Source of the DNA: Octopus sinensis
Taxonomy: Eukaryota
DNA: 54,587 nucleotides
Reading direction: 5' to 3'
Assembly (NCBI RefSeq): GCF_006345805.1
Contig: NW_021826282.1
Coordinates: 1-54,587, forward strand
Numbering within the stretch: the stretch's first letter is position 1; the number at the start of each line of letters is the position of its first letter. The notes beneath the pieces are model-generated. The model made no database searches, was not told where the DNA came from, and worked only from the letters and a program-made list of their open reading frames with translations. Below, piece by piece: positions 6,473 to 53,745 of the stretch. The position numbers were made by a program, and so were the translations under genes.

Positions 6473-7533
6473 ATGGGTGTGTTTTTATGCTAATATGTAA
6501 TTGGTTATATATTTGCTTTTTGCATTTTTAAAAATTTTTTTTGTGTGTGTGAAGCTGAAATGAATAAATTAAGGTCGAAGATATATATCTCAAGTTTAAA
6601 TAAAGTCATCGTACGAATGTTGGGGGTTTTCGCCTACTTCGTAATCCTATAAGGGAAATATATATGGTGACGAATAAATATTAATAAATTATGTTAATAT
6701 TGTTTATAACATGCAAAAGCACAGCGAATATACGGATATTGATACACACGCAAAAGTATATAACACGACTTTAGTTCATGAATGTGTGAGAATGCATATC
6801 GTGCGCGTGCTTATCTATAAGCGCATGGCGCGTGCACTTGTATTTATGTTTGTGTGTTTGTGTGTGCCAAATAGCTAAAGCATTTGAAATAGAATTTCAA
6901 ATCTGCAAGCTAGTGCTTGCAATGAACACACAGACAGTGATATGCACGCTGGTTTACACACACCCAGCATTAATTCTGGTTTAAAATACAAACTTGAAAG
7001 TTCAGTCAACGCAGAAGAGTTCCAACTGGGTGAAATCTTCAAGAGGTTCGAGTGTATAAGTCTACGATATCCATGTACCAGCAGTGGGGGAAACTGAGGC
7101 GCCATAACCTGGATGCGGCCCAGCCTCTTTATAGTCTAAGACGTTAAGAGCCGAACACTTGCCTGGTGTTGGTGGTGGTGGTGGTGTGGGGTCGGTTCTT
7201 CTCTGAAGACCTGATAATCCTCTCTGTTGAAAGTTTCTTACAACAAGTATATTACCATTTACCCACACAGGTAACATTCCACTCTCCAAACCACCGACGT
7301 TGTTTTAGGGAGAGGGAACCAATCTTGGTTCGACAGAGCTCGTTAGCATTCTCGTGGAAGGCGTCGCTGTCAAGGCTCAGATACCCGTAGTAAATACATA
7401 AAAGCACCCAGTCCGCCGCTTTAACATTTCCGTTAATTCAACGCCGTGGAAACAATCCAAAGTGATGTCAGCAACAACCTTTAGAGAAATGACTGAATAC
7501 GTGCTATTGTTATGTTAATACACTTACCCATTG

Positions 7534-7931
7534 AGGGCGGTGAGCTGGCAGAAATGCCTGGAGGTATTTCGTCTGCCGCTACGTTCTGAGTTCAAATTCC
7601 GTGGAGGTCGACTTTGCCTTTCATGCTTTCGGGGTCGATAAATTTAAGTACCACTTACGCACTGGGGTCGATATAATCGACTTAATCCCTTTGTCTGTCC
7701 TTGTTTGTCAACTCTATGTTTAGCCCCTTGTGGGTAGTAAAGAAATAGCTATTTCGTCTGCCGTTATGTCTTGAGTTTGAATTCCGCCGAGGTCGACTTT
7801 GCCTTTCATCCTTTCGGGGTCGATTAAATAAGTACCGGTTACGCACTGGGGTCGATGTAATCGACTTTATCCCTTTGCCTGTCCTTGTTTGTCCCCTCTA
7901 TGTTAAGCCCCCTGTGGACAATAAAGAAATA
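7534..7931 (+). mobile_element. tRNA-derived SINE family B, head-to-tail dimer within one target-site duplication
   Basis: Unit 1 at 7534-7748 (GGCGGTGAGCTGGCAGAA...GAGTTCAAATTCC...GGTCGACTTTGCCTTTCAT...AATAAAGAAAT-like end); unit 2 at 7749-7931 restarts at TATTTCGTCTGCCG. Flanks AATACACTTACCCATTG (7517-7533) and AATACTCTTACCCATTG (7932-7948). Confidence 0.9.
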
Positions 7932-8440
7932 AATACTCTTACCCATTGCATATATAAATGCTACACTTATATTTCATAGAATCAAATTTACCCTGTGTGA
8001 TGGGTAAGAGGTTTCATTATTGATTAACTCCGTGGGGATGTGATGAGGTGGCTTGTTTCCTCTTCTGAAGAGGCTGTAAGTAGAAGCTAAACCAATGGAG
8101 AGAGTCTCATTATCTTTCTCTGCATGCTGAGAAATAATTATATTTCTGATCATGCAGAGGTCGCTGGTGTGATTTCATTCCAGCGCAAAATATGCATACT
8201 TTTGTGAATAAGGAGCATTAAAGAAGGAATATCTCGCAAAGCTCTCGTTTTCACGAAATTTTCTTTTCATTTCAGCACGATTAACTTTCTCAAGCTCAAA
8301 ATCTTTAACGCTGCTACAAATTATAGATCTCCACTCTCCCATATTTATTGCAAGAGATTCAAGACATTTCTAATATAATTCAAGACATTCCAAATTTGAT
8401 CTTTTCTTCGGTTTACTGTTTTATATTTCTAACAATACGC

Positions 8441-14125: not shown

Positions 14126-14234
14126 GGGGGGGGGGGCGTTGTGTGTGTACACGCGTGCGTGTGTATGTGCATGCGTGCGTGTGTGTGGTGACATGCGTGC
14201 GTATGCGCACGTATACATATATACATACATATTA

Positions 14235-14428
14235 TTTCTACTCTAGGCACAAGGCCCTAAATTTGGGGGGATGGGTCTAGTCGATTAGATCGACTCCAGT
14301 ACACAACCGATACTTAATTTATTGACTCCGCAGGGATGGAAGGCAAAGTCGACCTCGACGGAATTTGAACTCAGAACATAAAAAAACATTTCGCCCGGCC
14401 TGCTAACGTTGCTGTCAGCTCGCCGCCT
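14235..14428 (-). mobile_element. SINE family B (AGAGTAGAAA-tail variant)
   Basis: TTTCTACTCTAGGCACAAGGCCC...AAGGCAAAGTCGACCTCG...CAGCTCGCCGCCTT. Confidence 0.88.
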
Positions 14429-15221
14429 TTATATGTGTATATATTAACACACATATATCTTATATGCTGCGGCGAAAAAGAAACTCCAGACCCACTATAA
14501 ACTGACGGATAACACCGATCCAATCGGTAATACTAATTAAGAGGTAAACGATATTAACAACATGAAGACGCTATTACCAATTAGCTAACGTTGGAAGTAC
14601 CACACCAATGGCGTTGTAACCCATGGGGTGTTTTTCTGCTGTAGCCTATAATTTAAAATGATTTGTACCTTAAAAATAGTTAATTATCCTACTTCTCTGA
14701 TATCGGTTTCAGCCAGAGATTGTGTCTTGCTGGGGTGAAGGTCAGAACTCTAGTCAATATTATATTAAACTGTTCTCAATCTCAACTCCGTTATGGATAT
14801 TAAGGATGTTTTTAGGCCTGAGGAACCTCATCCGTCTCCAAGTTTGACCTCATCAGTTTTCTTCCAAAGAGAGAAAGTCAGACATTTTGAACGAAAGAGT
14901 GAGACAAATAGAAGAACTTCTCTGCAATGTAAAACCGATACTTAAAGATGAAAAGTACTGCAGTCTTCGGTGTGATTCAAAATCAGAGAGTAATATTAGT
15001 AAGTGGAACGATAACCGCAATGCAATTCTCCGGCGCACTCACAACTCAGCCTATGGGGCACCTAATTAAAATATCCTCATTTCAAATGATCAAAAAAGTA
15101 AATTAGAGCTAATTTCTTGACAATTCATAAAGTGATTCAGACATTTCTTTGTCATTAATAGAAACCCTCAACCGAGATATGTTGATATTCATAAGCAACG
15201 CCATTACTGTTACCCTAATGG

Positions 15222-16375: not shown

Positions 16376-17100
16376 GAGGATTGTAAACATCAAGGCAGTC
16401 CAACTACGGAGGTGATAAGCAGTTTGTCAAGTTTTACCTTCCTCTCAAAACACCATAGAGACTTCAGTTCAGCAACCCATCGGTAAGCTTTGTAGTATGT
16501 GTGAGGGAGAGAGAGAGTGAGGGGTAGAGAACCTTGCAAACAATGAATGTAATAAACATGAACTGAAAATATCGTATAAATGAAAGGGGTATAATTACTG
16601 ATGTACACGCCTCCGATCTTGTTGCCTCATAATATCCAGAAAAATGAATACTTTATAACGAAATTTTCTACAAATACGGCTTAGATGTTGCGGCTTCAGA
16701 GTACTTAGGGACTTATGGGAAATAATTTTTCTGAGGTGGTGGTGAGAGAAGTTTCGGGAAATTCCCACGATCCGATTTTTTCCCTCGTAACTTCTAGGAG
16801 AATGGGTATCTTTTAATGAAAGTTAATACAAATACCTTTCAAACGACATAGATTACGATTATAATTTTGCGGGAAAAATTTTTCCAAGGGCGTGTGAAGA
16901 GGAGTTTTGGTAAAACGAAGTTTCGGATCAGGAAGACCAAATAAGTTAGAACTGCTCTGTTTTGACACAGATTTTCCCCCATTTTCAAAAAATCATAGAT
17001 TTCCGTTGGGGAGGGTGCGTCGGGGGCATCTTTGTATGAAAAAAAGGTTTGAATTTTTTCTTTTACAAGTCCCCCTCCCACATCATCCCACTCTGACCCT

Positions 17101-18090
17101 ATTTTGGCCAATTTTTGCAGTTTAAAACCATCTGAGGAGCCTTTTCGGTATGAAAAAAAACTGTTAACATTTTCAGAGGGAGAAGTGATTGATTTAAGGA
17201 AGATTTGGCTGTAGTTTCTATCACATCTCAAGACAACCCGCCTCGTTTCATTATCGATCTCGGATGTATTGATGTTTTCCAATATTCTTCTCCCCCATAA
17301 ATACATTTGTATAAAAAAAAGAAAATTTTTTAAATTATGATTTTTTTTGCAGCCCAACTCCCTGCCCTCCATTGTTTCTGCTTATAATTTAAAACACTGG
17401 AGATCCCGAGAATATCACTGCTGGCATTAATCCACAGCGATTTTTTAAAAAGAAAGAGTTAGTAAACGATAATTCATTTTACTGGCCTATTTTTCTGTTA
17501 GAAAGTGTTTTTCTTCCACACACGGCTTCGCTTGATTGCGGTAAGAATTTAGATTAGGATTTTATTTTGATGCTTATATTCCACCAATGGACTACGCGTG
17601 TGTTATTCCCGCATCATCATTCCATAAAATGTATTTCATGGGAGAAAAATATTGAAAAAACGTCAATACACGTGAGAGTGAAAACGGAGGGTGGTTTTGG
17701 TTGTGCTAGAAACAACAGCTAAACTTCCCTTGAAATGTTCACCTTTTCCTCTGAAAATATCTACAGTTGAGGTTTTTTTAAACCGAAATGGCTCCTCCCA
17801 TCATTTTAAAGTTTTAGAATAATGGAAAAAATCAGTCCGGATGGTTATTATTCTCAGGCTTATAACGTTCCAAATAGCCATAGCAACAAAATCATTTTTT
17901 AATTTAAAAAAAAGTTGTACCGGTATTTTACCAAACAGCAAACCTCCCTGGAATGCTTCTCTGAAAATATTTACATTTTTTTTTTAACCGAAAAGCCTCG
18001 TCCCATGGATTTTAAGCTTTAAAAATGGCCAAAATCACTCCGAATTGTTATTATTGTAAGGCTTATTGCGTTCCAAACAGCCATAACAAC
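17101..18090. repeat. Old repeat unit present as two direct copies (17749-17887, 17959-18090) and one inverted copy (17101-17178)
   Basis: Shared frame CTCTGAAAAT...TTTT.A.ACCGAAA.G.CTC.TC..AT..TTTTAA...AAAAT(T)GG..AAAAT. Confidence 0.7.
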
Positions 18091-18092
18091 AG

Positions 18093-18094
18093 CA

Positions 18095-18142
<48 letters not shown>

Positions 18143-18143
18143 G

Positions 18144-18184
<41 letters not shown>

Positions 18185-18188
18185 GCTG

Positions 18189-18225
<37 letters not shown>

Positions 18226-18235
18226 AACAACAACG
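18093..18235. repeat. (CTA)n microsatellite upstream of the R4/Dong element
   Basis: Direct inspection. Confidence 0.97.
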
Positions 18236-18410
18236 AGAGCAATAATATTAAAAACATATAACCTCCATCCTTCCCAAACACACAATCTACAACAGCCACG
18301 ACGTTCACCACCACCACTAGAACTATTTCTACTACTATTATCCAGTAGCCATGAACTCTATCTGGTCCCGGGGCCTTCCAACTGCAAATAACAGCGACAT
18401 TATTTGCATC

Positions 18411-21175
18411 CTTAAAAAGGTTGATCTGTGGAAATTGAACCAAGAAACGAAAAATGTCAATGAAATTCTGAAATACATCAGAGCAAAAAACATCACAGGA
18501 ATAAATAATTTAATCAAGGAAGCAAGTATTGTTGTAGCAGAAAATGTGGGTGTCGATGTCAAGAAAAAGGAACATTATGGGAGTGACAAAAGAAAAGATC
18601 CATGGTGGAAAAGAAGAATACAGGCGGGGTTAGACATGCTCTCGAAGGATATTTCTGTAAGAAAAGGCCTGAAAGTAGTAATGGAGGAACTGAAACAGCG
18701 CCTCGGTACAAAGAAAGCAAACGACCAAAGAATGAAGAGGTACCAGCAGAATATGTTATTCAGAGTTGATCAGAAGAGATTCTACAAAGAAATAGATGGA
18801 AAGTGTACAGATGAAAAAGATGATACCAGATAACATTGAAAGTCAAAGGTTTTGGAATGACATCTGGAGCAAAGACAAGGAGCACAACAAGGATGCTGAA
18901 TGGTTGCAAGAACTGAAACAAACGGTATTCTGTCCAAAACAGGCAGAAATTGTCATTTCAGTTAGGGAAGTGGAGGAAATCAGCAAACAAATGGGCAACT
19001 GGAAGGCCCGGGGACCAGATGGGGTTCAAGGCTACTGGATCAAAAGATTTGCACAACTTGACACCTTGTTAAATGCCGACTAAGTAACACCAGAGTGGTT
19101 GATAATGGGTAGGACGGTGCTGTGCTTGAAAAACATCGGAAAAGGCAATACGGTAGACAATTACAGGCTGATATCCTGCTTGACACTTATGTGGAAATTA
19201 TTGACTGGAATACTCGCAGAGTCAATGTATGGACATGTTGAATAAATAGAAGCCTGCCACATGAGCAGAAGGGGTGCAATGGTAAGTGCAGCGGTACCAA
19301 GGATCAACTTCTGATAGACAAGACCGTACTTAGAGACTGCAAAAGGAAGAAAAGTAACTTAGCCATGTCATAGACCGATCATCGTATGGTATACGATATG
19401 ATCCCACATTATTCGATTATGGAATGTGTGAACCTATTTGGTATTGCACTGAATGTTGAATGGTTGCTTGGAAAAAAATATGGCGTAGTGGAGAAGAGAA
19501 ATGACAGCATACGGAATTTAGAGACAGGAGAAATCAGGAGGGGCATCTTCCAAGGGGACTGCCTGTCCCCACCGATCTTTGTACTCTGCATGATGCCACT
19601 AACACTGATTCTGAGGAAAGCAGAGGCTGGGTATGTATTCAAAAGCCACCAACAAAAAGTCAACCACTTGTTATTCATGGCTGGCCTCAAACTTTATGGT
19701 AAACATGAATCCCAAGTCAGTTCCCTCCTTGTTACGGTGTATACTTTCAGTGCTGATATCGGAATGGAGTTCGGACTGAGAAAGTGTGGTGTGTTAGTCT
19801 TGAAAAGAGGCAAAATCAAATGTATGGACGGACTAACGATACCGTCGGGGGAGGTTATGAAGCAGATAGAAGAGACGGGCTATAAGTACTTGGGGATATT
19901 AGAAATGGATAAAGTGACGGAGAAAGAAATGACAGTCAAATTTAAGGTGGAGTACTTGCGCAGATGGAGACCGATATTTAAGTCAAGATTAGACGGACGG
20001 AATAAGATTGAAGCTATCAACACCTGGGCGGTTTCACTCCTTAGATATGAAGCAGGAGTAATCGCATGAACAGTAGACGAACTAAACAGCTTAGACAGGA
20101 AGACAATGAAGTTGCGGACTAGATATGAGTCACTCCACCCAAAATGTGACACATACAGACTGTATGTAACAAGAAAATAAGGGGGAACAGGACTGATTGG
20201 ATGCGAACACAGCATTAGAGCAGAGGAAAACAACATAGCATGGTATGTAAAAATGCCACAGAACCACTATTATTGGAAGTAAGGAGGTCAGGCTTGTGTA
20301 GGATGGAAGATTGCACTGTAGAAGCACTTGAGAATGAACGAAACTGAAAATAGGTGGGTAAAGAAAAGATACATGGACAATTTCATAGAGATGTTGAAGA
20401 TAAGACAGACAGGGAAAAATAGCTATGGATGACTAAAAGTGATATAAAACGGAAACGGAGTCTCTAATTTGTCTTGCCCAAGAGCAAGCATCAAATAGAG
20501 AATAGAAAACACATCAGAAAGTGATAAGTGCAAAATTTCTTGACAAAATGGTGAAACCGTATGGCATATTACCGGTCAATGTATGCCACTAGTGCAGAAA
20601 TAATATCAAAGACGTCATGACAACATAGCAAGGATTGTCGACTGGACACTTTGCAACAAGTATGGACTTAACAGAGCAAAAAAACTGGTACGGACATAAA
20701 CCTGAAGGCATCATCGAAAATGATAAAGCGAAGATCCTATGGGATTCTATGATTCAGTGCGACCATGAGATGGAAAATAGGAAACCAGACATAGTTTTAT
20801 TGAGAAAGAAAACAAACGATGCTGGATCATAGATATAGCATGCCCAGCTGACAACAAGGTTTGCGATAAGGAAGAAAGAGAAGTCGAAAGATATGACAGG
20901 TTAGCTTAGGTGATTAAGCCGTTGTGGTTATTGAAAAAGGTGGTAGTAGTACCAATAATTGTTGGAGCCCTGGGAACAGTGAGCAAAAGTCTTGAGAAGT
21001 GCATGAAACAAATAGGGGCTGCAATAAGGGTGGAGCACTTGCAGAAAACAGCACTGCTTGGAACCGCTCGAATACTTCGGATGATGCTCGAAAAATAAGA
21101 GGGGTTACCTTAGTTCACTGGTAGTGAACAGCTGACACTGTAGTACATCTCCAGCGTTAGAAGCTGTGCAAAGGC

Positions 21176-27779: not shown

Positions 27780-27881
<102 letters not shown>

Positions 27882-27884
27882 CTT

Positions 27885-28076
27885 AAGGCAGCGAGCTGGC
27901 AGAAATGTTAGATGCTTAGCGATATTTTGTGTCTTTATATTCTGAGTTCAAATTCCACTGAGGTCGACTTTCATCCTTTCAGGATCGATAAATTAAGTAC
28001 CAGTTGTGTAACGGAGTCGGTCTAATTGACTGGCCCCCTCCTCAGAAATTTCGGGCCTTGTGCCTAGAGTAGAAAA
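27885..28076 (+). mobile_element. SINE family B (AGAGTAGAAA-tail variant)
   Basis: AAGGCAGCGAGCTGGCAGAAATGTTAG...GAGTTCAAATTCC...GGGCCTTGTGCCTAGAGTAGAAAAG. Confidence 0.88.
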
Positions 28077-28113
<37 letters not shown>

Positions 28114-32542: not shown

Positions 32543-32588
<46 letters not shown>

Positions 32589-32599
32589 ATGTATAAAGC

Positions 32600-32800
32600 G
32601 ATCTGGCAGTATCGATAGTACACAGGACGAAAATGATTAGCGAGATTTCGCCTGTCTTTACATTCTGATTTCAAATTCCACTGAGGTCGACTTTGCCTGT
32701 CATCCTTCCCGGGTCCGTAAAATAGATACGATTTCAAACCTGGGAACGATGTAATCGACTTACCCCTCACCCTAAATTACTGGCCTTGTGTCAACACTTG
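32600..32800 (+). mobile_element. SINE family B, diverged
   Basis: GATCTGGCAG...TTCAAATTCCACTGAGGTCGACTTTGCC...GATGTAATCGACT...GGCCTTGTGTC. Confidence 0.75.
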
Positions 32801-32994
32801 AAACTGATGTGTGCGTGTGCGTGTGAACATTAAATATCCAACCTTTTGGGTTGTTTCATTAGGAAGTGACAGGTATTTTATGTAGAAGTGAACAATCGGA
32901 ATAGAATTGGTGATAACTGTTAACGTTAATGATTATTTGTTATATTTTGATTGAAAATTCGGGTAAAATATTCAGTACCCAACAAACCAATACA

Positions 32995-36476: not shown

Positions 36477-36750
36477 GATACATACATATATGCATACATG
36501 TTTATATATGGCATATATATGTATGCAGGAACATCAGTAAATTATAATTTTATGTAATATATTTCGCTCTCAAATAGACACACTTATTGCAATGGTCCTT
36601 CAAAATGAGCTGTAAAAGAACTCGGAACATTGGGTATTGAACCAAACCTTTCGCGATACCCTTAATGGCAGGAAATTTCCAGTAACCCCTCGTATATATA
36701 TATTTATACATTATTATGTAAACACAAATACGCATAATCATATAAAGAAG

Positions 36751-36955
36751 AAGGCGGCGAGCTGGCAGAAACGTTAGCACGCCGCGAGAAATGCTTAGCG
36801 GTGTTTCGTCTGTCTTTACGTTCCGATTTCGAGATTCAGTTTGCCTTTCATCCTTTCGGGGTCGATAAATTAAGTACCAGTTGCATACTGGGGTCGATGT
36901 AATCGACTGGCCCGCTCCACCAAAATTTCGGGCCTTGTGCCTAGAGTAGAAAAGA
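36751..36955 (+). mobile_element. SINE family B (AGAGTAGAAA-tail variant)
   Basis: AAGGCGGCGAGCTGGCAGAAACGTTAGCACGCCG...TTTGCCTTTCATCCTTTCGGGGTCGATAAATTAAGTACCAG...GCCTAGAGTAGAAAAGA. Confidence 0.9.
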
Positions 36956-37327
36956 TAATCATAAGAAGGAGAGAGAGGAAGATGGTCATGTAGAAGAGAG
37001 TTAGTTAAAGTGAGAGGGGGAAAGAGAGAAGAAAGAGATGGTGTGAGTAACCGAATGCTTGAAGGAGTGAGGAGAATTGAAAGTGTTTGTAGATGAATAA
37101 TTGTTGGCTGCAAGAAGAAATTAGATTGAACGAGAGAGAGAGAAAGAGTTTTAACTGAATTTTCAATATGTTTGTGATTTTTCGATGACACTCCACCCTT
37201 GTTTGTGGTGACGAGATTCGAAGCAGACATTTCAGCAGACATTGTCCACTTCTTATACAGATAATCTAGATTATTCGAACTTACAATTGAGAGCATCTGC
37301 ACACACACACACACGCTGTTAATATTC

Positions 37328-37535
37328 CTTTTTATTAGGGGCACAAGGGCTGAAATTTCGAGGAACAGGAATAGAAGATTATATGGAACCCAGTGTTCGA
37401 CTAGTACTTATTTTATTCACCCCGAAATGATGAAAGGTAAAGTCGACCGCGGTAGAATTTGAACTGAGAATGTAATGGCGGATGAAATGCCGTTAAGCAT
37501 TTTGTCCGGCCTGCTAACGGTCCTGTCAGCTGACC
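37328..37535 (-). mobile_element. SINE family B, diverged
   Basis: GGCACAAGGGCTGAAATTT...GGTAAAGTCGACC...CCTGCTAACG...GTCAGCTGACC. Confidence 0.75.
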
Positions 37536-37761
37536 ACCATACATAAAACGTTAATTTTAGAAAGCAATAAGGTGGAGAACCAACATACCCGTTAATACGC
37601 TAGGCTTATCGGCAGTGGTGGTCTTCTTCGGTCATGAGTGGAAAGCTATTATACACACACACACATTAAATACTGCAAGGAGGCATTCTGAGTGATGCTC
37701 TAGCGATTCCGATAATCTGTCGCTTTATCCCTTAACTTTTGACATAATAATATTAATCCTT

Positions 37762-37975
37762 TCTTCTAGAGAAACAAGCTCAGAAATGTTGTGTGAGCGG
37801 GAGTGGGGGCTAAACGACTGAATCGAACCCAATACGTTACAAGTACTTATTTTATCGATCACGAAAGGATGAATGGCAAAATCCACATCGGTGCAAATCA
37901 AACTCAGATCGTCAAGGCGGACGAAATACCACTAAGCATTTTGTCCGGCATGTCTTAACTATTCCGACATTTCGT
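37762..37975 (-). mobile_element. SINE family B, diverged
   Basis: AGTACTTATTTTATCGATCACGAAAGGATGAATGGCAAA...GGCGGACGAAATACCACTAAGCATTTTGTCCGGC. Confidence 0.7.
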
Positions 37976-38144
37976 CGCCATAATAATAAACGTATCAAGA
38001 ATACTTCCATTTATTTGCCACAAGTGCTATGAATGAAAGGAATATTAGATGTACAGATGACAAGTTAAATGGAATCAAAAAGTAAATTTACAAAGTCTAA
38101 AAATGTGCTAACACCTTAAGACCAGGTGAGGACTAATGAAGGAA

Positions 38145-39868: not shown

Positions 39869-40120
39869 TTCTCGTAAATTATGGGAGATTGTAAACCGAT
39901 ACCAAGAAGAGGTCATAATAGGTGAGGTATGTGGGCATCATTTTCCATAAGATATCTATCGTAAATTCCATTAATCGTGATATATAGGCATGCCTGTATC
40001 AATGTATATATATATATATATATATATATATGCATATATATATATGAATGTATTTATACACACATACATACATTCACACATACACACACATGTATATGTA
40101 TATATATACATATATATATA

Positions 40121-40163
<43 letters not shown>

Positions 40164-40483
40164 ATATATGTATGTATGTATGTGTGTATGTATGTATGTA
40201 TGTATGTCTGTAAATTGAAGGCCAAAATATCAATCGCATTGCTGAAATTATCTTTCTCTATTTAGGAATCTCGTTCTCCCTTGTTTATTTAACCTGTCAT
40301 ATATACGGTGCCCACAAATAGAGAGCCACTCTGACCTCTAATATGTGCGCGAGTGTGTGCGTATATGTGCCTTCAGGTTAGAAGGTTTAAGTGTACATGC
40401 AGAGTAGGTATGTATGCAAATGTATACATACATCAATATCTATATTATGATGTACACGCAGACATACTCATATATATCCGTGT

Positions 40484-40518
<35 letters not shown>

Positions 40519-41771
40519 GCGTATGTGTATAGTATTATATATATATATATATACATATACACATATACACATATATGTATATATATAAATATATAAGCTT
40601 CTGTGTACTAGTGTGTGTATGCGTGTATACGTACATATATGCAGGCATATATACATGCATACATACATACATACATGCATACATGCATGCATACATACAT
40701 ACATACATACATACATACATACATACATACATACTACATATATGCAGGCATATATACATACATATATGGAGGCATATATACATACATACATATATGCAGA
40801 CATATATACATGCATACATACATACATACATACATACATACATACATACATACATACTGGGTGGTACAAAGATAGTTAAGTATAATGTGAACATAATACA
40901 AATATATATGGAAAAACGGAAAACGTTGAAACGCAGCAATGGAGTAACATATAGACAAACAAAAAGGAAAAGGACAGCTTGTGACCAGTTAGAACCGGAC
41001 GAATAGTTTTGTCAGATGTGATAAAATCATGTGTAATTACATTGCGAGTCCCAGAATACCGTGATATATAGAAAAACTTCGCTGGTCACTTTTGACGTCG
41101 ACCAATGCTCTTAGCAATTGTCTTTGTTGGGGTCAAGGGGCCAGATCCCCCTTTATTAGGCGGACATACACTCGCCGCTACAACACAAAACACACAAACA
41201 CAAGAAACACAGTTTCTCACAAACGAACAGAGCAAAGTATATATATGTGTGTGTGTGTGTGTATACACATATATACATATATAGCGGGAGTTATATGGAT
41301 ATACAAATGTAAAAAATGTATGTATGTCTACTATTTATACACACATATACATATATACATACATATGTATATATATATATATATAATATATATATAATAT
41401 ATATATACATATAGACATATAATATATATGTACATACATATATTATAATATCTATATATATATATATAATTATATATTATAATATATACATACGTACATG
41501 AAGAGATATGTTGCTGGTTTCCACACACATAGACTGAGTTATTTATCTATTTATCTATCTATATATATGTATATATATATATATATATATATCTATAATG
41601 TAATATATATATATATATAGATATATATATATATATATATATATGTTGTTTGTGTGTGTGTGGTGTATGTATGTATATATGTATGTATGTAAAATCGATG
41701 TCATATATTTGCCATGAGTTCGATGAGTTTTGTATTTCTGAAGCGTAGTGGTTTCGTGTCTGTGGGTGTGG

Positions 41772-41806
<35 letters not shown>

Positions 41807-41895
41807 GTGGTTTCTTTGTGCTTGTGTTTGTATGTGTGAGTACGCATGTGCATTCTTAAGTGTATATCTCATTGTGCTTTTTTGTGTTTTCCCGT

Positions 41896-43192
41896 GTGTG
41901 ACTATGCGTATATTATATTCGCATGCAATATTTTCGTTTTCCACTGTACTGTTTTGTATATACGAACACATGAATTAGAGGCGTGTATACCAGTGCATAT
42001 AAATGTATAGTTTATTATTTCTAATAAATCAGGTGACCACACGGATACCCTGGTCTTGGTTTCTATAGCTGATGCCTATATCACTTGCTATTACTGAGAT
42101 GATAAAGAATGGAACAGTTTTCGTCTAACGACCCCTTTACAACATACAAACGAAACATCGGGTGCTCTTCTATTCCGCAGCAAGCTGAGATCTGTGGCAG
42201 TCAAAATCTTCAAATCACAACCTACCGTCTAAAATGGGATAAAACCCATTAGATGATGTCGAACCTGTTGCGTAGCAGTATTTCTTCCGATCCCTTATGT
42301 TCCCCGTTCAAATCCTACCCAAGTCGATTTTGCATTTCGGATTCGTTAAGATAAAGTAACAATCAAATACTGGGGTCCATGTAATCGCCCTATCCGCTTC
42401 CTTCAAACTTGCTGGACCTGAAACCTGTAATGATCCCCGGTGTCCCATTCGGGATAATTACCCACGGTCAATTACTTCGCACCACCATGGAAAGTAGGTA
42501 AACGGGCGTTTGTGCATTGGGCCTCGAGAAAAAAAAATCACGAAACGTTTTGAAGACTAGCATTGAAAAGTAAAGAAGAGGACCTTGATAGAATCTTTTG
42601 TAATATCGTCTGAGAAAGTTCCTTTCACATGCCTTGATGTAATAAGTCAGGAAGAATAAATGGAATAGTCGGTGTCGGATCGCATCTGGTCAAATGTCTG
42701 AACGGTCAACATCAACCCAGGGGTTAAAGTACAAAAATAACAGTGTCGTCTACACTGATACTCCGACCCCGAAATGCAAAATCGACTTGGGTAGGATTTG
42801 AACGGGGAACATAAAGGATCGGAAGAAATACTGCTACGCAACAGGTTCGACATCATCTAATGGGTTTTATCCCATTTTAGACGGTAGGTTGTGATTTGAA
42901 GGAGGTTTTGACTGCCACAGATCTCAGCTTGCTGCGGAATAGAAGAGCACCCGATGTTACGTTTGTATGTTGTAAAGAGGTCGTTAGACGAAAACTGTTC
43001 CGTTCTTTGTCATCTCAATAATAGCAAGTGATATTGGCATCAGCTATAGAAACTAAGACCAGGGTATCCATGTGGTCACCTGATTTATTAGAAATAACAA
43101 ACTATACATTTATATGCACTTATTATATACACACCTCCAGTTCAGCACAGGAGAAAACGAAATATTGCATGCGAATATACGCATAGTCACAC
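41896..43192. repeat. Long inverted repeat, arms 41896-42340 and 42769-43192, 428-bp spacer
   Basis: About 12 differences over the inner ~350 bp (~96-97%); the outer ~95 bp are more diverged, with indels. Confidence 0.95.
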
Positions 43193-43544
43193 CACCATTA
43201 ACAGCACTACTATTACCACCACCACCACCACCACCACCACCACACTAGCACCTCTACTTATATTACTACTACTAGTAAAACCAATGACTATAGCCTCTTC
43301 TTCATTGATATCTGTTTATGAACCAAACCCATAGCCGTCACTCGTAAATAGTTAACTTGCTAACATTGACAATGTTTTTGCTCACTGTTTTATGTGCCCA
43401 TCTAATCGCTATCAGATATACATCCGCTTCTCTACTCTGCCGGCCTTGATTCAAAGATGTATCGACTGGCTGTGTGGGTGGGGGGCACCACCATTTATTT
43501 CTATCTCATTCCAGTGGAATTGCCTTAAGAAAGAACAGAAAACG

Positions 43545-43600
43545 CACAGGAATCGAACCCACTTACATTTGTGTGTTGAGGGCAGTGCTATACTCCATTT
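43545..43600 (-). mobile_element. Isolated degenerate tRNA-derived SINE head
   Basis: The minus strand reads GGAGTATAGCAC...GTGGGTTCGATTCC (B box); no cloverleaf can be completed. Confidence 0.4.
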
Positions 43601-44129
43601 TCGAATGTAGTAGCCAACGAAGCTGCTCTTTAGCTGTTTCAGACCTTTTCACCGCGATCCCACAATCGATGTAGGCCACAAACCTACCCCAAAACATCAC
43701 GAGCTCAATCGAATCAGATGTTGCGATTCTAGGACAAATGTTTCCTCAAAGCTCGATCTTTCACCGTCTTGCATAATAACCTGAGGATAATACTAAGACA
43801 ATAGTTTAAACTGCAGATCCGTCCGAGGCAGAATTGGGGGTCGGGGCGAGGGGGGGGGGCGTACATAAAGTGCATAACTAAATACCGCAATGCATATTAT
43901 TGGAAGTTCTATCAGGTCTTGTAGTTAAAAAACATAAAATTATGCTGTGATAGGTGTTTATGTTACCAAGAACATCTCACCTCCTATTTACTCTTCCTCA
44001 CTAATTCTAAGAATAATATTTTCCATTAGTAATTATTTCAAGAACAAATAAAAATTTCTTCTATTTCTTCTCTTTTACTCTTTCACTCCAGCCGTCACTC
44101 CAAGACTTAACTCACTCTCTTTTGCACAC

Positions 44130-44191
44130 TTTAATATCTTTCTTTCCCTCTATTTCTTCCTTTGTTCCCTTCTTTCTTCCTTTCTTTCTTC

Positions 44192-44249
<58 letters not shown>

Positions 44250-44656
44250 CAACCGTAAACGCCTCTCTTCCTCCTCCTCTCTACCATTTCTTTCATTACT
44301 TAATATCAACTGTTTTCTATCACTCTCATTTTCTCTCTCACTCACTCACTCACTCACTCACCCCTACACTCTTCCTCGGTCACTCACCCAACCTCCAACG
44401 CACTCATACCCGACTACAATCACTTACTCCTTCAACTCGACACTTATCTTCCCTTCAATCATCCTCTTCCACCCTCATTTTATGTCTCTTCTTTCTACCA
44501 CTTCTTCTCTATTACCTTTCTCTCTCTCGCTACTCTATGCCTCTCCTCTCTCTCTACGCTTGCTCTTCCTACCCCTCTATGTCTCTTCTTTCTACCTCTC
44601 ATTTTCTCTCTTTCTCAATGACTACATTTTGTCTCTTACTATCCCAGTGCACACGC

Positions 44657-44687
<31 letters not shown>

Positions 44688-44875
44688 CACACACGCACAC
44701 ACACACAAACACATATACATGTTCATGTATACATGTACACAGAATCTGCCCTTTCTCTCTTTCACTCTCCTTCTCTCTTCTCTTCTCTTGCACTCTTCTC
44801 ATTGCGAGTGTTTCCTCCTCTCCTCTCACTTTTCCTTATACCTTCTCTCAAAAATTTCACTGCACAAATCTCATT

Positions 44876-44963
<88 letters not shown>

Positions 44964-45209
44964 TCTATCTTTTATTATTTATCTCTCTATCTCTATCTAT
45001 CTATCTATTTATTTATTTATCTCTCTATCTCTATCTCTCTATCTATCTACCTCTCTATCTATCTATCTATCTCCTATCTATCTATCTATCTATCTATCTA
45101 TTATTATTAATCTCTCTATCTCTATCTATCTATCTATCTATTCCTCTCTATCTATCTCTCATCTATCTACCTCTTATCTATCTATCATCTATCTATCTAT
45201 CATCTATCT

Positions 45210-45248
<39 letters not shown>

Positions 45249-45412
45249 ATCTATCTACATCTATCTTTCTTTCTCTCTTTCTTTCTGCCTTCCTTTGTTT
45301 GTTCCTTTCTTTTTGGTCTCTCTCTCTCTCTCTCTCTTGTTATTTCGTTTCTTCCTTTCCTTCCCCCACTCTCTTTATTCTTTATTTCCTCTTTCGTCCT
45401 TTCTCTATCACT

Positions 45413-45447
<35 letters not shown>

Positions 45448-45600
45448 TTTCCTCCACTTTCGCTGCCTCTATCGACAATTTCATTACACAGCCTTCACTG
45501 TCCACCCTCCACCCGCCCTCTCTCCCCATCTCCCTCGCCAAAACTCTTTCCCTTTCTCCCCTTCTCCCCCCTAACCATTCTGCCCACTTTATCCTAATCC
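44130..45600. repeat. Pyrimidine-rich low-complexity block, (CTTT)n/(CT)n/(TCTA)n
   Basis: Direct inspection; source of the 491- and 470-aa pseudo-ORFs. Confidence 0.9.
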
Positions 45601-46182
45601 TGTTTTCTCACTTCAAAGTTCCTTTTACCGTGTGATAACCATTTTTATTCTTCATCTCATTCCTGTTGCAACTTTGATTTTTTACCATCTTCCATTCTCA
45701 CGGGATTTCTTCTTAATGTCCTACATTTCCCGTCACATCACAACACTCTTTCACCACACTCTGCTACACTACTACCGCACACAATACAACACCACACTGC
45801 GCCATACTACATCAATAAACATTACACGACAAACCACATCGTGCTACATCACATACTACTCCCTACTCTGCACTATGCAACAAAACTACAACATCCTGCA
45901 CGCGCCTCGCCACACTAAATACAGCTCACTGTACTACATCCCAACTCACTTCAGATCGTCAATGCACTACACACCACCACGCAACACTTTACCACTCTAC
46001 ATCACAATATATGACACTTACATGGCACCACAATGCAATACACCACTCCATACAATACGTCATACAACACCGCACAACGCTACACCACACAGCACCACAC
46101 TGCACCGCCCACACATTACACCTCCTCCATTCTACACGTCCAACACACCATACCTCCACCACACTACACTTCCACCATTCTT

Positions 46183-46413
46183 ATTTCTTTATTGCCCACA
46201 AGGGGCTAAACATAGAGGGGACAAACAAGGACAGACAAAGGGATTAAGTCGATTACATCGACCCCAATGCGTAACAGGTACTTAATTAATCGACCCCGAA
46301 ATGATGAAAGGCAAAGTCGACCTCGGAGGAGTTTGAACTCAGAACGTAACGGCAAACGAAATACCGCTAAACATTTCTTCCTGCGTGCTAACGACTCTGC
46401 CAGCCCGCCGCCT
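46183..46413 (-). mobile_element. SINE family B (AATAAAGAAAT-tail variant) inserted into a C/A-rich minisatellite
   Basis: ATTTCTTTATTGCCCACAAGGGGCTAAACATAGAGGGGACAAACAAGG...GAAAGGCAAAGTCGACC...CAGCCCGCCGCC. Confidence 0.9.
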
Positions 46414-47152
46414 TTCTACACACCTCCACCATTCTACACATTCATTACACAACGCCCCCACTCCACTATACCATCACCCCTCTACACATCCACCACACTA
46501 CACCTCCACCAACTATACCACCACCCCACTATAACTCCACCACACTATAACTCCACCACACTACACCTCCACCTACTACACCTTCACATACTATACCACC
46601 ACCCTCTACACTTCCACCAAACTGCACCTCCACCACACTACACCTCCACCACACTACACCTCCACCAAAGTACACCTCCACCACACTACACCTCCACCAC
46701 TCAACACCTCCACCTACTACACCACCACCTACTACACCACCACCTACTAAACCTCCACCACACTACACTTCCACCAAATTACACCTCCACCACACTACAC
46801 CTCCACCTTCTGCATCTCGCCCCACTACACGTCCACCCCACTACACCCCCACCCAACTACATCTCCACCTTCTACACCTCCACCCGCTACACCTCTACCA
46901 CACTACACCTCCACCACACTACACCTCCACCACACTACACCTCCACCACACTACATCTCCACCTTCTGCACCTCGCCCCACTACACGTCCACCCCACTAC
47001 ACCCCCACCCAGCTACATATCCACCTTCTACACCTCCACCCTCTACACATCCACCACACTACACCTCCACCAAATTACACCTCCACCTTCTGCACCTCCA
47101 CCCCACTACACCTCCATCTACAACACCTCCATCCTCAACACATCCACCACAC
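46414..47152. repeat. 16-bp minisatellite (CTCCACCACACTACAC)n with a ~156-bp higher-order duplication
   Basis: The unit recurs throughout; CTCCACCTTCTGCA.CTCGCCCCACTACACGTCCACCCCACTACACCCCCACCCA appears at ~46801 and ~46957. Confidence 0.9.
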
Positions 47153-48947
47153 TATCGGGGGTTGATAAAATAAGTACCAGTCGCATACTGGGGTCGATGT
47201 AATCGACTCACCCCCACCCTCCACCTCCCCCAAGATGTCCTTCTGGCAAACATTTGAAATCATTATTCTCCTGCCATACACCGTCGTCCTACAGAAGCAG
47301 ACATTTCCATACAAAACTCTGTCTCATCTGCATAACCACACCACTCTCTCTCTCTCTCTCTCTAATTTCCCTCTTTCTCCTCTCCCTCTCCTCTCCCTCT
47401 CTCCTCTCCCTCTCTCCTCTCTTTCTCTTCTCTCTCTCTCTCTCTCTCTTTCCTCTCTCCTCTTTCTCCCTTGTTCTCTTTCTCTCTATCTATATATTCC
47501 TTTCTCTTCCTCTCTCTTTATGCATCTCTGTATTTCTCACTCTTTCTCTCTCAGAAGTTCGTCCACCCCACAAAAAAGAAAAAAAAAAGTTAAATTTCAA
47601 TTAAAAAGCAAAACATTAAATTAATTCCACGTCTGACGTTTTAAAACATTTTGTTTTTGCCCAGATGCAATTGGTTCTCGAAGATCAGAAAATGGTAAAG
47701 AAGCTGCAATGGTGGAGAGACTGATGCGATGTATAAAGAATTTAGAATACAATTGAACTGACAATAAATGACTCTGTCTCTCTCCCCCTCTCTCTCTCTC
47801 TCTCTCTCCATTTCTCTTTTTCTTTCTCCCTGTCTTTGTCTCTCCCTCGCTTTCCCTCTTTATTTTTCTCTCCATTCTCCTACTTTAATAGCTTTCATTT
47901 AACATGTTTATCACCAACACCACAACCACCTCCGCCGTCACCACCGCCGCCGCCACACCAGCGTTTTCGGCAGCATGGATTTTATCGTTTTTTGTGGTGT
48001 TGCTATCATCATCATCATCATCATCATCATTGTGTGTGTGTGTGTGTGTGTCCTCGCAACCTTCATTCTCTAAAAATGCGCAACAAAAGAACTCAATTTT
48101 CCTTGGCCATTGTCGATAAAAACAACAAAAACAAACCCGTAATTTACAGTATTTTCTTTCGTTTTTATGATGATCTTTTTTTTTTTTTAAAGTTGAATTG
48201 CATAAAAACCAAGAGATTTATCGCATTTCGTTAAGGGAGGTTTTTATAATAATATCATTGGATTGCTGTAAACGGTTCGTTCGGATTAATGATGTGATAA
48301 AAAATAAAATTCAGCACATAAAAAAAAACATAACTTAATAACAAAGAAAATAAGATAAGATAAAACACAAACATGGCTTTCTTTATAATTTAAACGAGAA
48401 CTTTTAAAAAAGGAATGGTATCATGGATTTGCTGGTAATCTTGTTAAAAACCTCCTGGAATAATCTCTCTGTAGATTTGAAATAAAAGCCGATGTTAGGC
48501 GTTAGCTATGCCCAGTCCAAAACATCGCTTTCGATTAAGAGAAAAAAATAGAAGCAAATTCTTCGTTCTGTTTTCTTCTTCTTTATAATCCTTTTACGTT
48601 CAAATTCCCTCCATGGTCAAATATGTCTTTCAATGTTATCGGGTCCATTAAATAAAGTAACTGTCAATAGGGGGCGATTAACTTGATTGCTTCAAACTCA
48701 TTCTTAAACACATGGATTCGGAATTCAAGGCCGTTTGCCTTCCTGGCTAATTTATTATCGTTGTGGCTGAAAAGGTATATTGTTGCGAAAAATACGTATT
48801 GCGTTACGCCCCTTTATATTCCCAGTTCATATTCTGACCAAACTTAATTTTAAAGTCAATCGTCATAGAAGCAATGAAATTATTTTCCTGTAAAAAATTG
48901 AAATTAATGATCACTTTACTTTCTCAGATCAAATCCTGCAACGTCAA

Positions 48948-53335: not shown

Positions 53336-53745
53336 GCAACGAGGATATCTACAGGTAATGCAGTACGATCGTTTCATGCAACTCAAACGTGCAAGTGGCT
53401 GAGCACTCCCCAGACACATATACTCTTAACGTAGTTCCCACCAATATATATATATTGGTGCAGGTGTGGCTGTGTGAAGGCGCATGGATTAGTGGGTAGA
53501 GCATTCGGCTAAAGATCGTAAGGTCGTGAGTTCAATTCCCGGCCACGCGTTGTGTCCTTGAGCAAGACACTTTATTTCACGTTGCTCCAGTCCACTCAGC
53601 TGGCAAACATGAATAGTGCCTGTGCCACTCTGAATCTCCCCGGGAACTACGTTAAGAGTATATGTGTCTGTGGAGTGCTCAGCCACTTGCACGCCTGAGT
53701 TGCATGAAACAATCATACTGCATTACCTGTGGATATCCTCGTTGC
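53336..53745. repeat. Inverted repeat, 104-bp arms (53336-53439, 53642-53745)
   Basis: 6 mismatches in 104 positions, no indels. Confidence 0.95.
53478..53692 (+). mobile_element. tRNA-derived SINE family F, internally deleted and 3'-truncated
   Basis: AAGGCGCATGGATTAGTGGGTAGAGC (A box) ... GAGTTCAATTCCC (B box), then TTGTGTCCTTGAGCAAGACACTTTATTTCACGTTGCTCCAGTCCACTCAGC. Confidence 0.8.

What the first reader, a model, noticed from the sequence alone, without database searches (positions are those of the whole stretch)
41896..43192. ~440-bp-arm fold-back inverted duplication with an identity gradient
Arms 41896-42340 and 42769-43192 are reverse complements. They show ~12 differences in the inner ~350 bp, only one mismatch in the innermost ~130 bp, and clearly more divergence with indels in the outer ~95 bp. 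The arms are a mosaic of old SINE-B debris and other degraded sequence, so a local inverted duplication fits better than two independent insertions. The inner turnaround lies inside the SINE-B remnant (TTCAAATCCTACCCAAGTCGATTTTGCATTTCGG), and the 428-bp spacer has no transposase ORF. If transcribed, this would form a long dsRNA. Coleoid cephalopods are known for extensive A-to-I editing, and long duplexes are ADAR and Dicer substrates. The gradient could reflect arm-to-arm gene conversion through cruciform or hairpin formation.
Basis: partly seen in the sequence, partly recalled or inferred. Interest (0 to 1): 0.75.

Follow-up and report, generated by a model that had tools for sequence, protein, structure and literature searches.

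The report
Local fold-back inverted duplication, probably inert
About 450 bp of non-coding DNA, ending inside an old SINE, was copied in reverse about 420 bp downstream of itself; this is most likely an ordinary replication or repair accident, and nothing shows that it has a function.

Summary
The inverted repeat is real and at the stated coordinates. Arms 41896-42340 and 42769-43192 align over 451 columns with 402 identities (16 substitutions, about 7 indels), around a 428-bp spacer with no ORF longer than 46 aa.

A profile of the window's own SINE copies shows one old SINE copy running unbroken from the left arm into the spacer (42269-42409). The right arm carries the same SINE piece with the same private indels, but it stops after about profile position 145. 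So the left junction is ancestral and the right arm is an inverted copy whose breakpoint lies inside the SINE.

There is no TSD, no tandem sub-repeat, no transposase, no other copy in the 54.6-kb window and no homology beyond the ends. Sixteen substitutions and 33 gap columns argue against an assembly chimera.

The "identity gradient" is only partly supported. The inner 133 bp have 1 mismatch and the next 212 bp have 9 (Fisher p=0.10, change-point p=0.04). The outermost 39 aligned bases have no substitutions, and the "divergent" outer part is one indel-rich patch.

The best reading is a single fold-back or template-switch inverted duplication, a known kind of mutation. The dsRNA/ADAR/Dicer role, gene conversion, genome-wide copy number and host taxon could not be tested here.

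The parts
41896..42345 (+). Left arm, the original copy. It consists of ~373 nt of sequence that is single-copy in the window, followed by the 5' part of an old SINE.
   Evidence: Alignment; the repeat finder I1/I2; no other copy in the window; SINE profile hit 42269-42409 crosses its inner end.
42346..42763 (.). Its first ~65-90 nt are the uninterrupted continuation of the left-arm SINE.
   Evidence: SINE profile positions 156-213 match 42352-42409 on their own at 24.9 bits. The spacer has no internal inverted symmetry above shuffles. ORFs are 46 aa or less. No SINE-like continuation on the right side.
42764..43192 (-). Right arm, the inverted derived copy of 41896-42345, ending at a breakpoint inside the SINE.
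   Evidence: The SINE profile hit 42840-42758 (minus strand) covers profile 68-163, with only the first ~5 nt beyond 42769 matching convincingly.
42269..42409 (+). Old, diverged, 5'-truncated copy of the window's abundant tRNA-related SINE. It spans the left arm/spacer boundary at 42340|42341.
   Evidence: nhmmer E=3.6e-18 against a profile of 7 window copies, profile positions 68-213; 62-67% identity to other copies.
42208..42340 (+). High-identity inner block (pairs with 42769-42901): 1 substitution in 133 nt. It is bounded on the outside by a 3-nt indel.
41941..41995 (+). Indel-rich patch (pairs with about 43118-43153): 6 substitutions in 34 aligned columns, with 21 extra nt on the left and 3 extra nt on the right. 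It accounts for most of the outer 'divergence'.
41756..41838 (.). (GT)n microsatellite 58 nt outside the left arm. It is a possible fragile or stalling site; this is context only.
   Evidence: TRF. Microsatellites cover 12.7% of the window, and P(a run of at least 20 nt within 60 nt)=0.19 per side.
43215..43243 (.). (ACC)n microsatellite 22 nt outside the right arm, next to the outer novel junction 43192|43193.
   Evidence: TRF.

Best explanation
This is a single, local inverted duplication, a 'fold-back' or template-switch insertion.

Inferred ancestral order: unique sequence U (41896-42268), then an old SINE (42269 to about 42430), then unique sequence (to about 42763), then the present right flank (43193 onward).

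Inferred event: during repair of a break, or at a stalled fork near 42763|43193, the 3' end folded back and primed about 420 nt upstream on its own strand, inside the SINE. It copied about 450 nt backwards (42345 to 41896), then was released and rejoined to the other end. The result is arm-loop-arm with a single-copy spacer.

Since then the two copies have drifted apart: K2P about 0.04 and about 7 indels. The inner 133 bp may have been re-homogenised by arm-to-arm template switching or gene conversion.

Shown: the anatomy, the SINE continuity on the left only, and the lack of TE hallmarks.
Inferred: the direction of copying, the break site and the enzymology.

The element is most likely selectively neutral. 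If a read-through transcript covers it, it would form a ~440-bp imperfect dsRNA, a generic substrate for ADAR or Dicer.
For: 1. Arms are 402/451 identical, and this is the top inverted pair in the window.
2. A SINE profile built from 7 other copies matches 42269-42409 in one colinear hit across the left arm/spacer boundary (E=3.6e-18). The spacer part alone scores 24.9 bits, whereas the mirror-image stretch beside the right arm scores nothing, like its shuffles.
3. Both arms share the same private SINE changes, an 8-nt deletion and a 2-nt insertion, so one SINE insertion was duplicated.
4. The SINE is about 35% diverged from its relatives while the arms differ by about 4%, so the duplication is much younger than the SINE.
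5. There is no TSD of 3 bp or more at any offset near the termini, no tandem sub-repeats, no long ORF and no second copy in 54.6 kb.
6. The architecture of original, single-copy spacer and inverted copy, with the junction in microhomology or inside a SINE/LINE, is what sequenced fold-back inverted duplications show (PMC3907307). DSB-templated foldback insertions made by Pol delta plus end joining have been demonstrated in yeast (PMC11724301).
Against: - No outgroup or empty site was available, so the polarity and the single-event history are inferred.
- Microhomology at the inner junction is ambiguous: TCG/CGA is separated from the arm by two mismatches.
- The experimentally documented DSB foldback insertions are mostly shorter than 150 bp, and the human cases are megabase-scale, so 450 bp lies between the well-studied size classes.
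- Genome-wide copy number is unknown, because no collection reachable here holds this genome.
- Both outer ends lie near A/C-rich (G/T-rich on the other strand) microsatellites, which could also be read as retroelement tails.
Confidence: 0.65

Rival explanations
1. The unit is a mobile element. Either it is a low-copy foldback/MITE-like DNA transposon with ~445-bp terminal inverted repeats, or it is two independent head-to-head insertions of one retroelement family that contains an antisense SINE fragment. In the second case the right copy is 5'-truncated and each 3' end faces an outward microsatellite tail.
For: - Long inverted termini are present.
- The outermost 39 aligned bases carry no substitutions, as expected if the termini were conserved.
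- Both outer ends are followed within 22-58 nt by A/C-rich microsatellites when read outward.
- A second, smaller inverted repeat in the window (53336-53745) does involve the 3' part of another SINE-like element, so inverted repeat copies occur here.
Against: - No TSD of 3 bp or more around the whole unit.
- No TSD above shuffles around the right copy or the left copy taken separately.
- No other copy of the arm in the other ~53 kb. For independent insertions at any uniform density, two copies within about 1 kb and none in the other 53 kb has likelihood of at most about 1.4% (my own calculation).
- The microsatellites do not abut the arm ends, the flanks are not homologous, and microsatellites are common here (12.7% of the window).
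- No tandem sub-repeats as in FB elements and no transposase ORF.
Confidence: 0.17
2. It is an assembly or sequencing artefact: a fold-back chimeric long read, or a mis-join, created a false inverted copy.
For: Fold-back chimeras are a known long-read artefact (my own knowledge). No reads were available to check.
Against: - The arms differ by 16 substitutions and 33 gap columns in about 7 indels, whereas a chimeric read copies the same molecule and should give near-identical arms.
- A 418-428-bp unique spacer containing the natural continuation of the SINE separates the arms, not an adapter or a zero-length turn.
Confidence: 0.05
3. It is a functional hairpin-RNA locus (an endo-siRNA precursor or a dedicated ADAR substrate). 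Its stem would be kept paired by arm-to-arm gene conversion or template switching, which would explain the near-perfect inner 133 bp. This concerns present function and is compatible with a fold-back origin.
For: - The predicted stem is about 440 bp at -808 kcal/mol, with perfect runs of 86, 53 and 46 bp (counted from the alignment and the positions).
- The inner block has 1/133 mismatches against 9/212 next to it, and the change coincides with a 3-nt indel.
- Template switching between inverted-repeat arms can homogenise them (PMC8604942, PMC8794818; abstracts listed).
- Octopus is reported to have an unusually high hyper-editing signal and many loci able to form long dsRNA (PMC5625713).
Against: - The identity contrast is borderline (p=0.04-0.10, with the breakpoint chosen after looking).
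- There is no Rfam match in the arms.
- The SINE head, which would carry the Pol III promoter region, is missing or degenerate (the profile match starts at position 68).
- The arms show no similarity to any gene in the window, and the junction ORF has no protein homologue, unlike Drosophila hpRNAs, which derive from their targets.
- Transcription is untested, and the host taxon is unconfirmed.
Confidence: 0.07

Closest known systems
Fold-back inverted duplications with a single-copy spacer (human constitutional cases, Hermetz et al. 2014, PMC3907307; yeast foldback inversions, PMC7467729)
   Same: The order is the same: original, non-duplicated spacer, inverted copy. The spacer/inversion junction falls in short inverted homology or inside an interspersed repeat. 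Spacers are in the 0.7-kb to several-kb range; here the spacer is about 0.42 kb.
   Different: The published cases duplicate kilobases to megabases, run to a chromosome end, and go through dicentric intermediates. Here only about 450 bp was copied and the end rejoined locally, so the event is interstitial. No hybrid SINE could be shown: the right side has no SINE continuation.
Templated foldback (inverted) insertions at double-strand breaks (Pol delta synthesis plus NHEJ/alt-EJ; PMC11724301)
   Same: The 3' end folds back on microhomology near the break, copies its own strand, is unwound and is captured by the other end. The product is a local inverted repeat around a loop. This is the mechanism proposed here.
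   Different: The reported insertions are 2 to about 150 bp with a 41-nt loop. Here the copy is about 450 bp with a ~420-nt loop. The enzymology in this animal is unknown.
Replication template-switch mutations that create or maintain hairpins (Loytynoja & Goldman 2017, PMC5453318; PMC8794818; PMC8604942)
   Same: A switch to the complementary strand creates inverted repeats and can re-homogenise existing arms. This offers a mechanism for the near-perfect inner block.
   Different: Those events are typically tens of bases. I took them only from the abstracts listed and did not read the papers in depth.
Inverted SINE pairs (such as inverted Alu pairs) as ADAR substrates; hyper-edited long dsRNAs (PMC5625713; PMC526178)
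   Same: Two nearby reverse-oriented similar sequences could pair within one transcript, and part of each arm is SINE-derived.
   Different: This is not two independent SINE insertions. It is one SINE fragment plus 373 nt of flank, copied together. Editing was not tested.
Drosophila hairpin-RNA (hpRNA) loci and MITE/foldback transposons
   Same: Both have a long inverted repeat with a loop, and hpRNAs arise by inverted duplication.
   Different: The arms have no known target gene and no small-RNA evidence. There is no TSD, no multicopy evidence and no sub-repeat structure.

Membership tests
Fold-back / template-switch inverted duplication | An inverted copy lies next to its source, separated by a non-duplicated spacer. 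| tested here: met
   Arms 41896-42345 and 42764-43192 with a 418-428-bp spacer. The spacer has no internal symmetry above shuffles.
Fold-back / template-switch inverted duplication | One arm/spacer junction is ancestral (colinear) and the other is a novel breakpoint. | tested here: met
   The SINE profile runs colinearly across 42340|42341 (E=3.6e-18). The mirror side has no SINE continuation beyond about 5 nt.
Fold-back / template-switch inverted duplication | Inverted microhomology, or a hybrid repeat, at the spacer/inversion junction. | tested here: inconclusive
   TCG (42343-45) faces CGA (42764-66), separated from the perfect arm by 2 mismatches. Alternatively the copy simply extends 5 nt and the left copy later mutated. 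There is no hybrid SINE.
Fold-back / template-switch inverted duplication | Related genomes have an empty site (the right arm is absent). | not testable with these tools
   No eukaryotic genome collection is available. Look-ups by ORF, protein and DNA pattern found nothing. The two metagenome hits to the SINE core are 21-nt chance matches; the contig inspected has 65% G+C.
TIR DNA transposon / MITE | A target-site duplication flanks the terminal inverted repeats. | tested here: not met
   No direct repeat of 3 bp or more at any combination of ends within about 10 nt of the termini.
TIR DNA transposon / MITE | Multiple dispersed copies. | tested here: inconclusive
   No other copy in the 54.6-kb window. 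The rest of the genome could not be searched.
TIR DNA transposon / MITE | A transposase ORF (autonomous element only). | tested here: not met
   The longest ORF lying entirely within the spacer is 31 aa, and ORFs overlapping the spacer are at most 69 aa. The 69-aa junction ORF has no homologue.
Foldback (FB-type) elements | Long terminal inverted repeats built of tandem sub-repeats. | tested here: not met
   TRF finds no tandem array inside 41896-43192.
Inverted pair of independently inserted SINEs | Two separate insertions, with homology confined to the SINE and each copy carrying its own diagnostic changes. | tested here: not met
   The homology includes 373 nt outside the SINE. Both copies share the same private 8-nt deletion and 2-nt insertion.
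hpRNA / endo-siRNA or ADAR-substrate locus | Transcribed across both arms, with clustered A-to-G changes or 21-22-nt small RNAs. | not testable with these tools
   No expression data are available. Only the folding potential was shown.
Assembly fold-back chimera | Near-identical arms meeting at a point or at an adapter. | tested here: not met
   16 substitutions, 33 gap columns and a 418-428-bp unique spacer.

The most novel reading that the evidence does not exclude
The fold-back is a young, lineage-specific hairpin-RNA gene. It would be transcribed through both arms, with its inner stem kept nearly perfect by recurrent arm-to-arm template switching or gene conversion, and it would feed ADAR hyper-editing or an endo-siRNA pathway. 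Together with the second small inverted repeat at 53336-53745, it would also hint that local fold-back copying is a recurrent source of the unusually high dsRNA-forming potential reported for octopus genomes.
Probability: 0.06. Interest if true: 0.55.

Novelty: new member of a known kind. Interest (0 to 1): 0.2.

Why it matters
Taken alone, this is a routine structural mutation in repeat-rich non-coding DNA. Its modest value is as a clean, datable example of a mid-sized (~450 bp) interstitial fold-back duplication. The polarity can be read directly from a SINE that crosses one junction but not the other.

If such events prove common in this genome, they would be a source of long dsRNA-forming loci that does not depend on transposons. 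That bears on why some animals, octopus among them (PMC5625713), show very high hyper-editing signals. Testing it needs genome-wide and expression data that were not available here.

Tried and rejected
1. Independent assemblies or paralogues. All routes were negative:
- Exact look-up of the 69-aa ORF that spans the right-arm/spacer junction found nothing on record.
- A homologue search with the same ORF found no candidates.
- A 24-mer from the arm found 0 hits in metagenome contigs.
- Control with the SINE-core 20-mer: 2 hits, both only 21-nt chance matches; the contig inspected has 65% G+C. That collection therefore holds no relevant DNA, and the negative says nothing about copy number.

2. 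Host identification through the LINE RT ORF. The best hit is 61% identical and unnamed, so the taxon is unconfirmed.

3. tRNA and Rfam scans. There are no tRNAs in the window. The only Rfam matches are sub-threshold miRNA models hitting microsatellites outside the arms.

4. Hypothesis that two pre-existing inverted SINEs mediated the switch, giving a hybrid SINE as in 3 of 21 human cases. Rejected: the stretch beside the right arm has no SINE signal beyond 5 nt.

5. Extension of homology into the GT-rich and ACC-rich flanks. The alignment score is no better than shuffles.

6. Retro-insertion rival. TSD searches around each copy separately gave nothing above shuffles.

7. Strand-biased substitutions. 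In 7 of the 12 transitions the left arm has C where the right has T, and only 2 of these are at CpG. The numbers are too small to interpret.

Full report
**Observation**

Reading 41500-43600 and running the repeat finder shows two gap-free inverted blocks. One is 41992-42209 against 42903-43120 (218 nt, 95%). The other is 42208-42345 against 42764-42901 (138 nt, 98%).

The left arm is 41896-42340 and the right arm is 42769-43192, with 402 identities in 451 columns. A BLAST of each arm against the whole window finds only itself and its partner (88.5%, E about 1e-170). In a self-comparison of the window this is the top-scoring inverted pair. The feature is real and far beyond chance.

**Fine structure of the arms**

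The arms differ by 16 substitutions (12 of them transitions) and 33 gap columns in about seven indel events.

| Segment (left-arm coordinates) | Substitutions / aligned nt | Gap columns |
|---|---|---|
| 41896-41940 | 0 / 39 | 6 |
| 41941-41995 | 6 / 34 | 24 |
| 41996-42207 | 9 / 212 | 0 |
| 42208-42340 | 1 / 133 | 0 |

The picture of a smooth gradient is not.
- The outermost part carries no substitutions, and the "divergent outer 95 bp" is one indel-rich patch.
- The inner-versus-middle contrast is borderline: Fisher p=0.096, single change-point permutation p=0.043, rank test p=0.053.
- The change coincides with a 3-nt indel at 42207/42902-42905.
- K2P distance over aligned columns is about 0.04 (my calculation).

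**What the arms are made of**

The short spacer matches found led me to an abundant tRNA-related SINE. I aligned seven clear copies from the window and built a profile of 262 nodes. The results:

- The profile finds 16 SINE matches in the window at E below 0.001, counting the two in the fold-back.
- In the fold-back it matches 42269-42409 on the + strand (profile 68-213, E=3.6e-18). This is a single colinear hit that crosses the left arm/spacer boundary at 42340|42341.
- It also matches 42840-42758 on the - strand (profile 68 to about 163).
- Both arms share the same private departures from the family, an 8-nt deletion and a 2-nt insertion. They are therefore copies of one SINE insertion, not two insertions.
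- This SINE copy is only 62-67% identical to its relatives, while other copies are 75-90% alike. The SINE is old and the duplication is much younger.
- The remaining ~373 nt of each arm (41896-42268) match nothing else in the window. "Mosaic of SINE debris" is therefore true only for the inner 72 nt.

**Polarity**

Scored alone, the first 210 nt of the spacer on the left side hit the SINE profile at positions 156-213 (24.9 bits). The mirror-image 209 nt next to the right arm give no hit at all, the same as their shuffles. The only continuation on the right is GGTCG (reverse complement of 42764-42768). That is the SINE consensus at that point, where the left copy reads ATTCG. So the copied segment probably ran to 42345/42764.

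It follows that the left arm and spacer are the ancestral, colinear sequence. The right arm is an inverted copy whose inner end is a breakpoint inside the SINE.

**Tests for a mobile element**

- No direct repeat of 3 bp or more flanks the unit at any plausible pair of ends.
- The arms contain no tandem sub-repeats.
- ORFs lying wholly within the spacer are at most 31 aa and those overlapping it at most 69 aa. The 69-aa junction ORF has no homologue.
- There is no tRNA and no Rfam family in the arms.
- Homology does not extend into the flanks.

I also tested a rival suggested by a second inverted repeat in the window: two independent head-to-head retro-insertions, each with its 3' end facing an outward microsatellite. 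(GT)n lies 58 nt left of the unit and (ACC)n lies 22 nt right of it.

- TSD searches around each copy separately gave nothing above shuffles.
- Microsatellites are common here: they cover 12.7% of the window, and P=0.19 per side of having a run of at least 20 nt within 60 nt.
- For any uniform insertion density, two copies within about 1 kb and none in the other 53 kb has a likelihood of at most about 1.4% (my calculation).

**Artefact**

A fold-back chimeric read would give near-identical arms meeting at a point. Here the arms differ by 16 substitutions and 33 gap columns. They are separated by 418-428 bp of unique sequence that contains the natural continuation of the SINE. No reads were available for a direct check.

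**Mechanism**

Sequenced fold-back inverted duplications show this same order of original, single-copy spacer and inverted copy. In all 21 sequenced human junctions a spacer of 766 bp to 70 kb was present. The junction lay in 2-8 bp of inverted microhomology, or inside oppositely oriented Alu/LINE copies (PMC3907307).

In yeast, a resected break end folds back on microhomology and is extended by Pol delta. It is then unwound and captured by the other end through end joining, which leaves a local inverted insertion around a loop (PMC11724301).

I therefore propose the following sequence of events:

1. A break or stalled fork occurred near 42763|43193.
2. The 3' end primed by fold-back about 420 nt upstream, inside the SINE.
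3. About 450 nt were copied backwards.
4. The end was rejoined locally.

The anatomy is shown. The break site, the direction of copying and the enzymes are inferred. Microhomology at the inner junction is ambiguous: TCG/CGA is separated from the perfect arm by two mismatches. The size lies between the well-studied classes, which are below 150 bp in yeast and kilobases to megabases in human.

**Gene conversion and dsRNA**

Template switching between inverted-repeat arms can homogenise them (PMC8604942, PMC8794818; abstracts). That mechanism could explain the 1/133 inner block, but the statistical support is weak and the breakpoint was chosen after looking at the data.

As RNA, 41880-43210 folds into one long stem (-808 kcal/mol). 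It has perfect runs of 86, 53 and 46 bp, counted from the alignment and the difference positions. That is ample for ADAR or Dicer in principle.

Octopus bimaculoides is reported to have one of the highest hyper-editing signals. It also has an unusually high fraction of loci able to form long dsRNA (PMC5625713).

Nothing here shows transcription:

- The SINE's 5' head is missing or degenerate; the profile match starts at position 68.
- No expression data could be consulted.
- I could not confirm the host. The LINE RT ORF at 19386-20069 (Pfam RVT_1) has a best database hit at 61% identity with no name.

**Verdict**

The functional and gene-conversion ideas remain untested speculation.

This is a new example of a known kind of mutation and is of low general interest unless expression or comparative data show otherwise.

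Noticed in passing
window 53336-53745: A second local inverted repeat. Arms 53336-53439 and 53642-53745 are 104 nt long and 98/104 identical, with a 202-nt spacer. The spacer contains a tRNA-like SINE head (GGTCGTGAGTTCAATTCCCGGCC), and the right arm looks like that element's 3' part, followed by a (TA)n tail. It may be a 5'-truncated inverted copy of the same SINE, or another small fold-back. The arms have no other copy in the window.
   Followed up: partly
window 41756-41838 and 43215-43243: Both outer ends of the fold-back lie close to microsatellites: (GT)~42 sits 58 nt to the left and (ACC)~10 sits 22 nt to the right. These could be fragile or stalling sites relevant to the break, retroelement tails, or coincidence in a window that is 12.7% microsatellite.
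   Followed up: partly
window 16839-20236: A degraded non-LTR retrotransposon. ORF 19386-20069 (+) matches Pfam RVT_1 (E=1.6e-07). Neighbouring ORFs at 18351-18833 (+) and 16839-17372 (-) have no Pfam hit. The best database relatives are only 61% identical or less.
   Followed up: partly
window 7527-7943; also 14216-14454, 27861-28087, 32586-32804, 36727-36969, 37318-37559, 37747-37987, 46165-46438: At least nine well-preserved copies of one tRNA-related SINE family of about 250 bp. They include a head-to-tail dimer at 7527-7748/7747-7943, and two sub-types that differ by a 19-nt insertion in the 3' region.
   Followed up: partly
window 44000-48000: A strongly strand-asymmetric block (GC skew -0.65 to -0.77). 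It contains long C/T-rich low-complexity ORFs and a tandem array at 46420-47154, whose direct self-matches are offset by about 143-220 nt at 76-82% identity.
   Followed up: no
window 40000-41400 and 44646-44741: Dozens of sub-threshold Rfam 'miRNA' matches (mir-297, mir-466, mir-3149 and others, all far below their gathering scores) fall on TA/TG-rich microsatellites. They are composition artefacts, not miRNA genes.
   Followed up: yes
window 43480-43610: A possible further tRNA-like SINE fragment on the minus strand (GGAATCGAACCC motif), about 300 nt to the right of the fold-back. It was not analysed.
   Followed up: no
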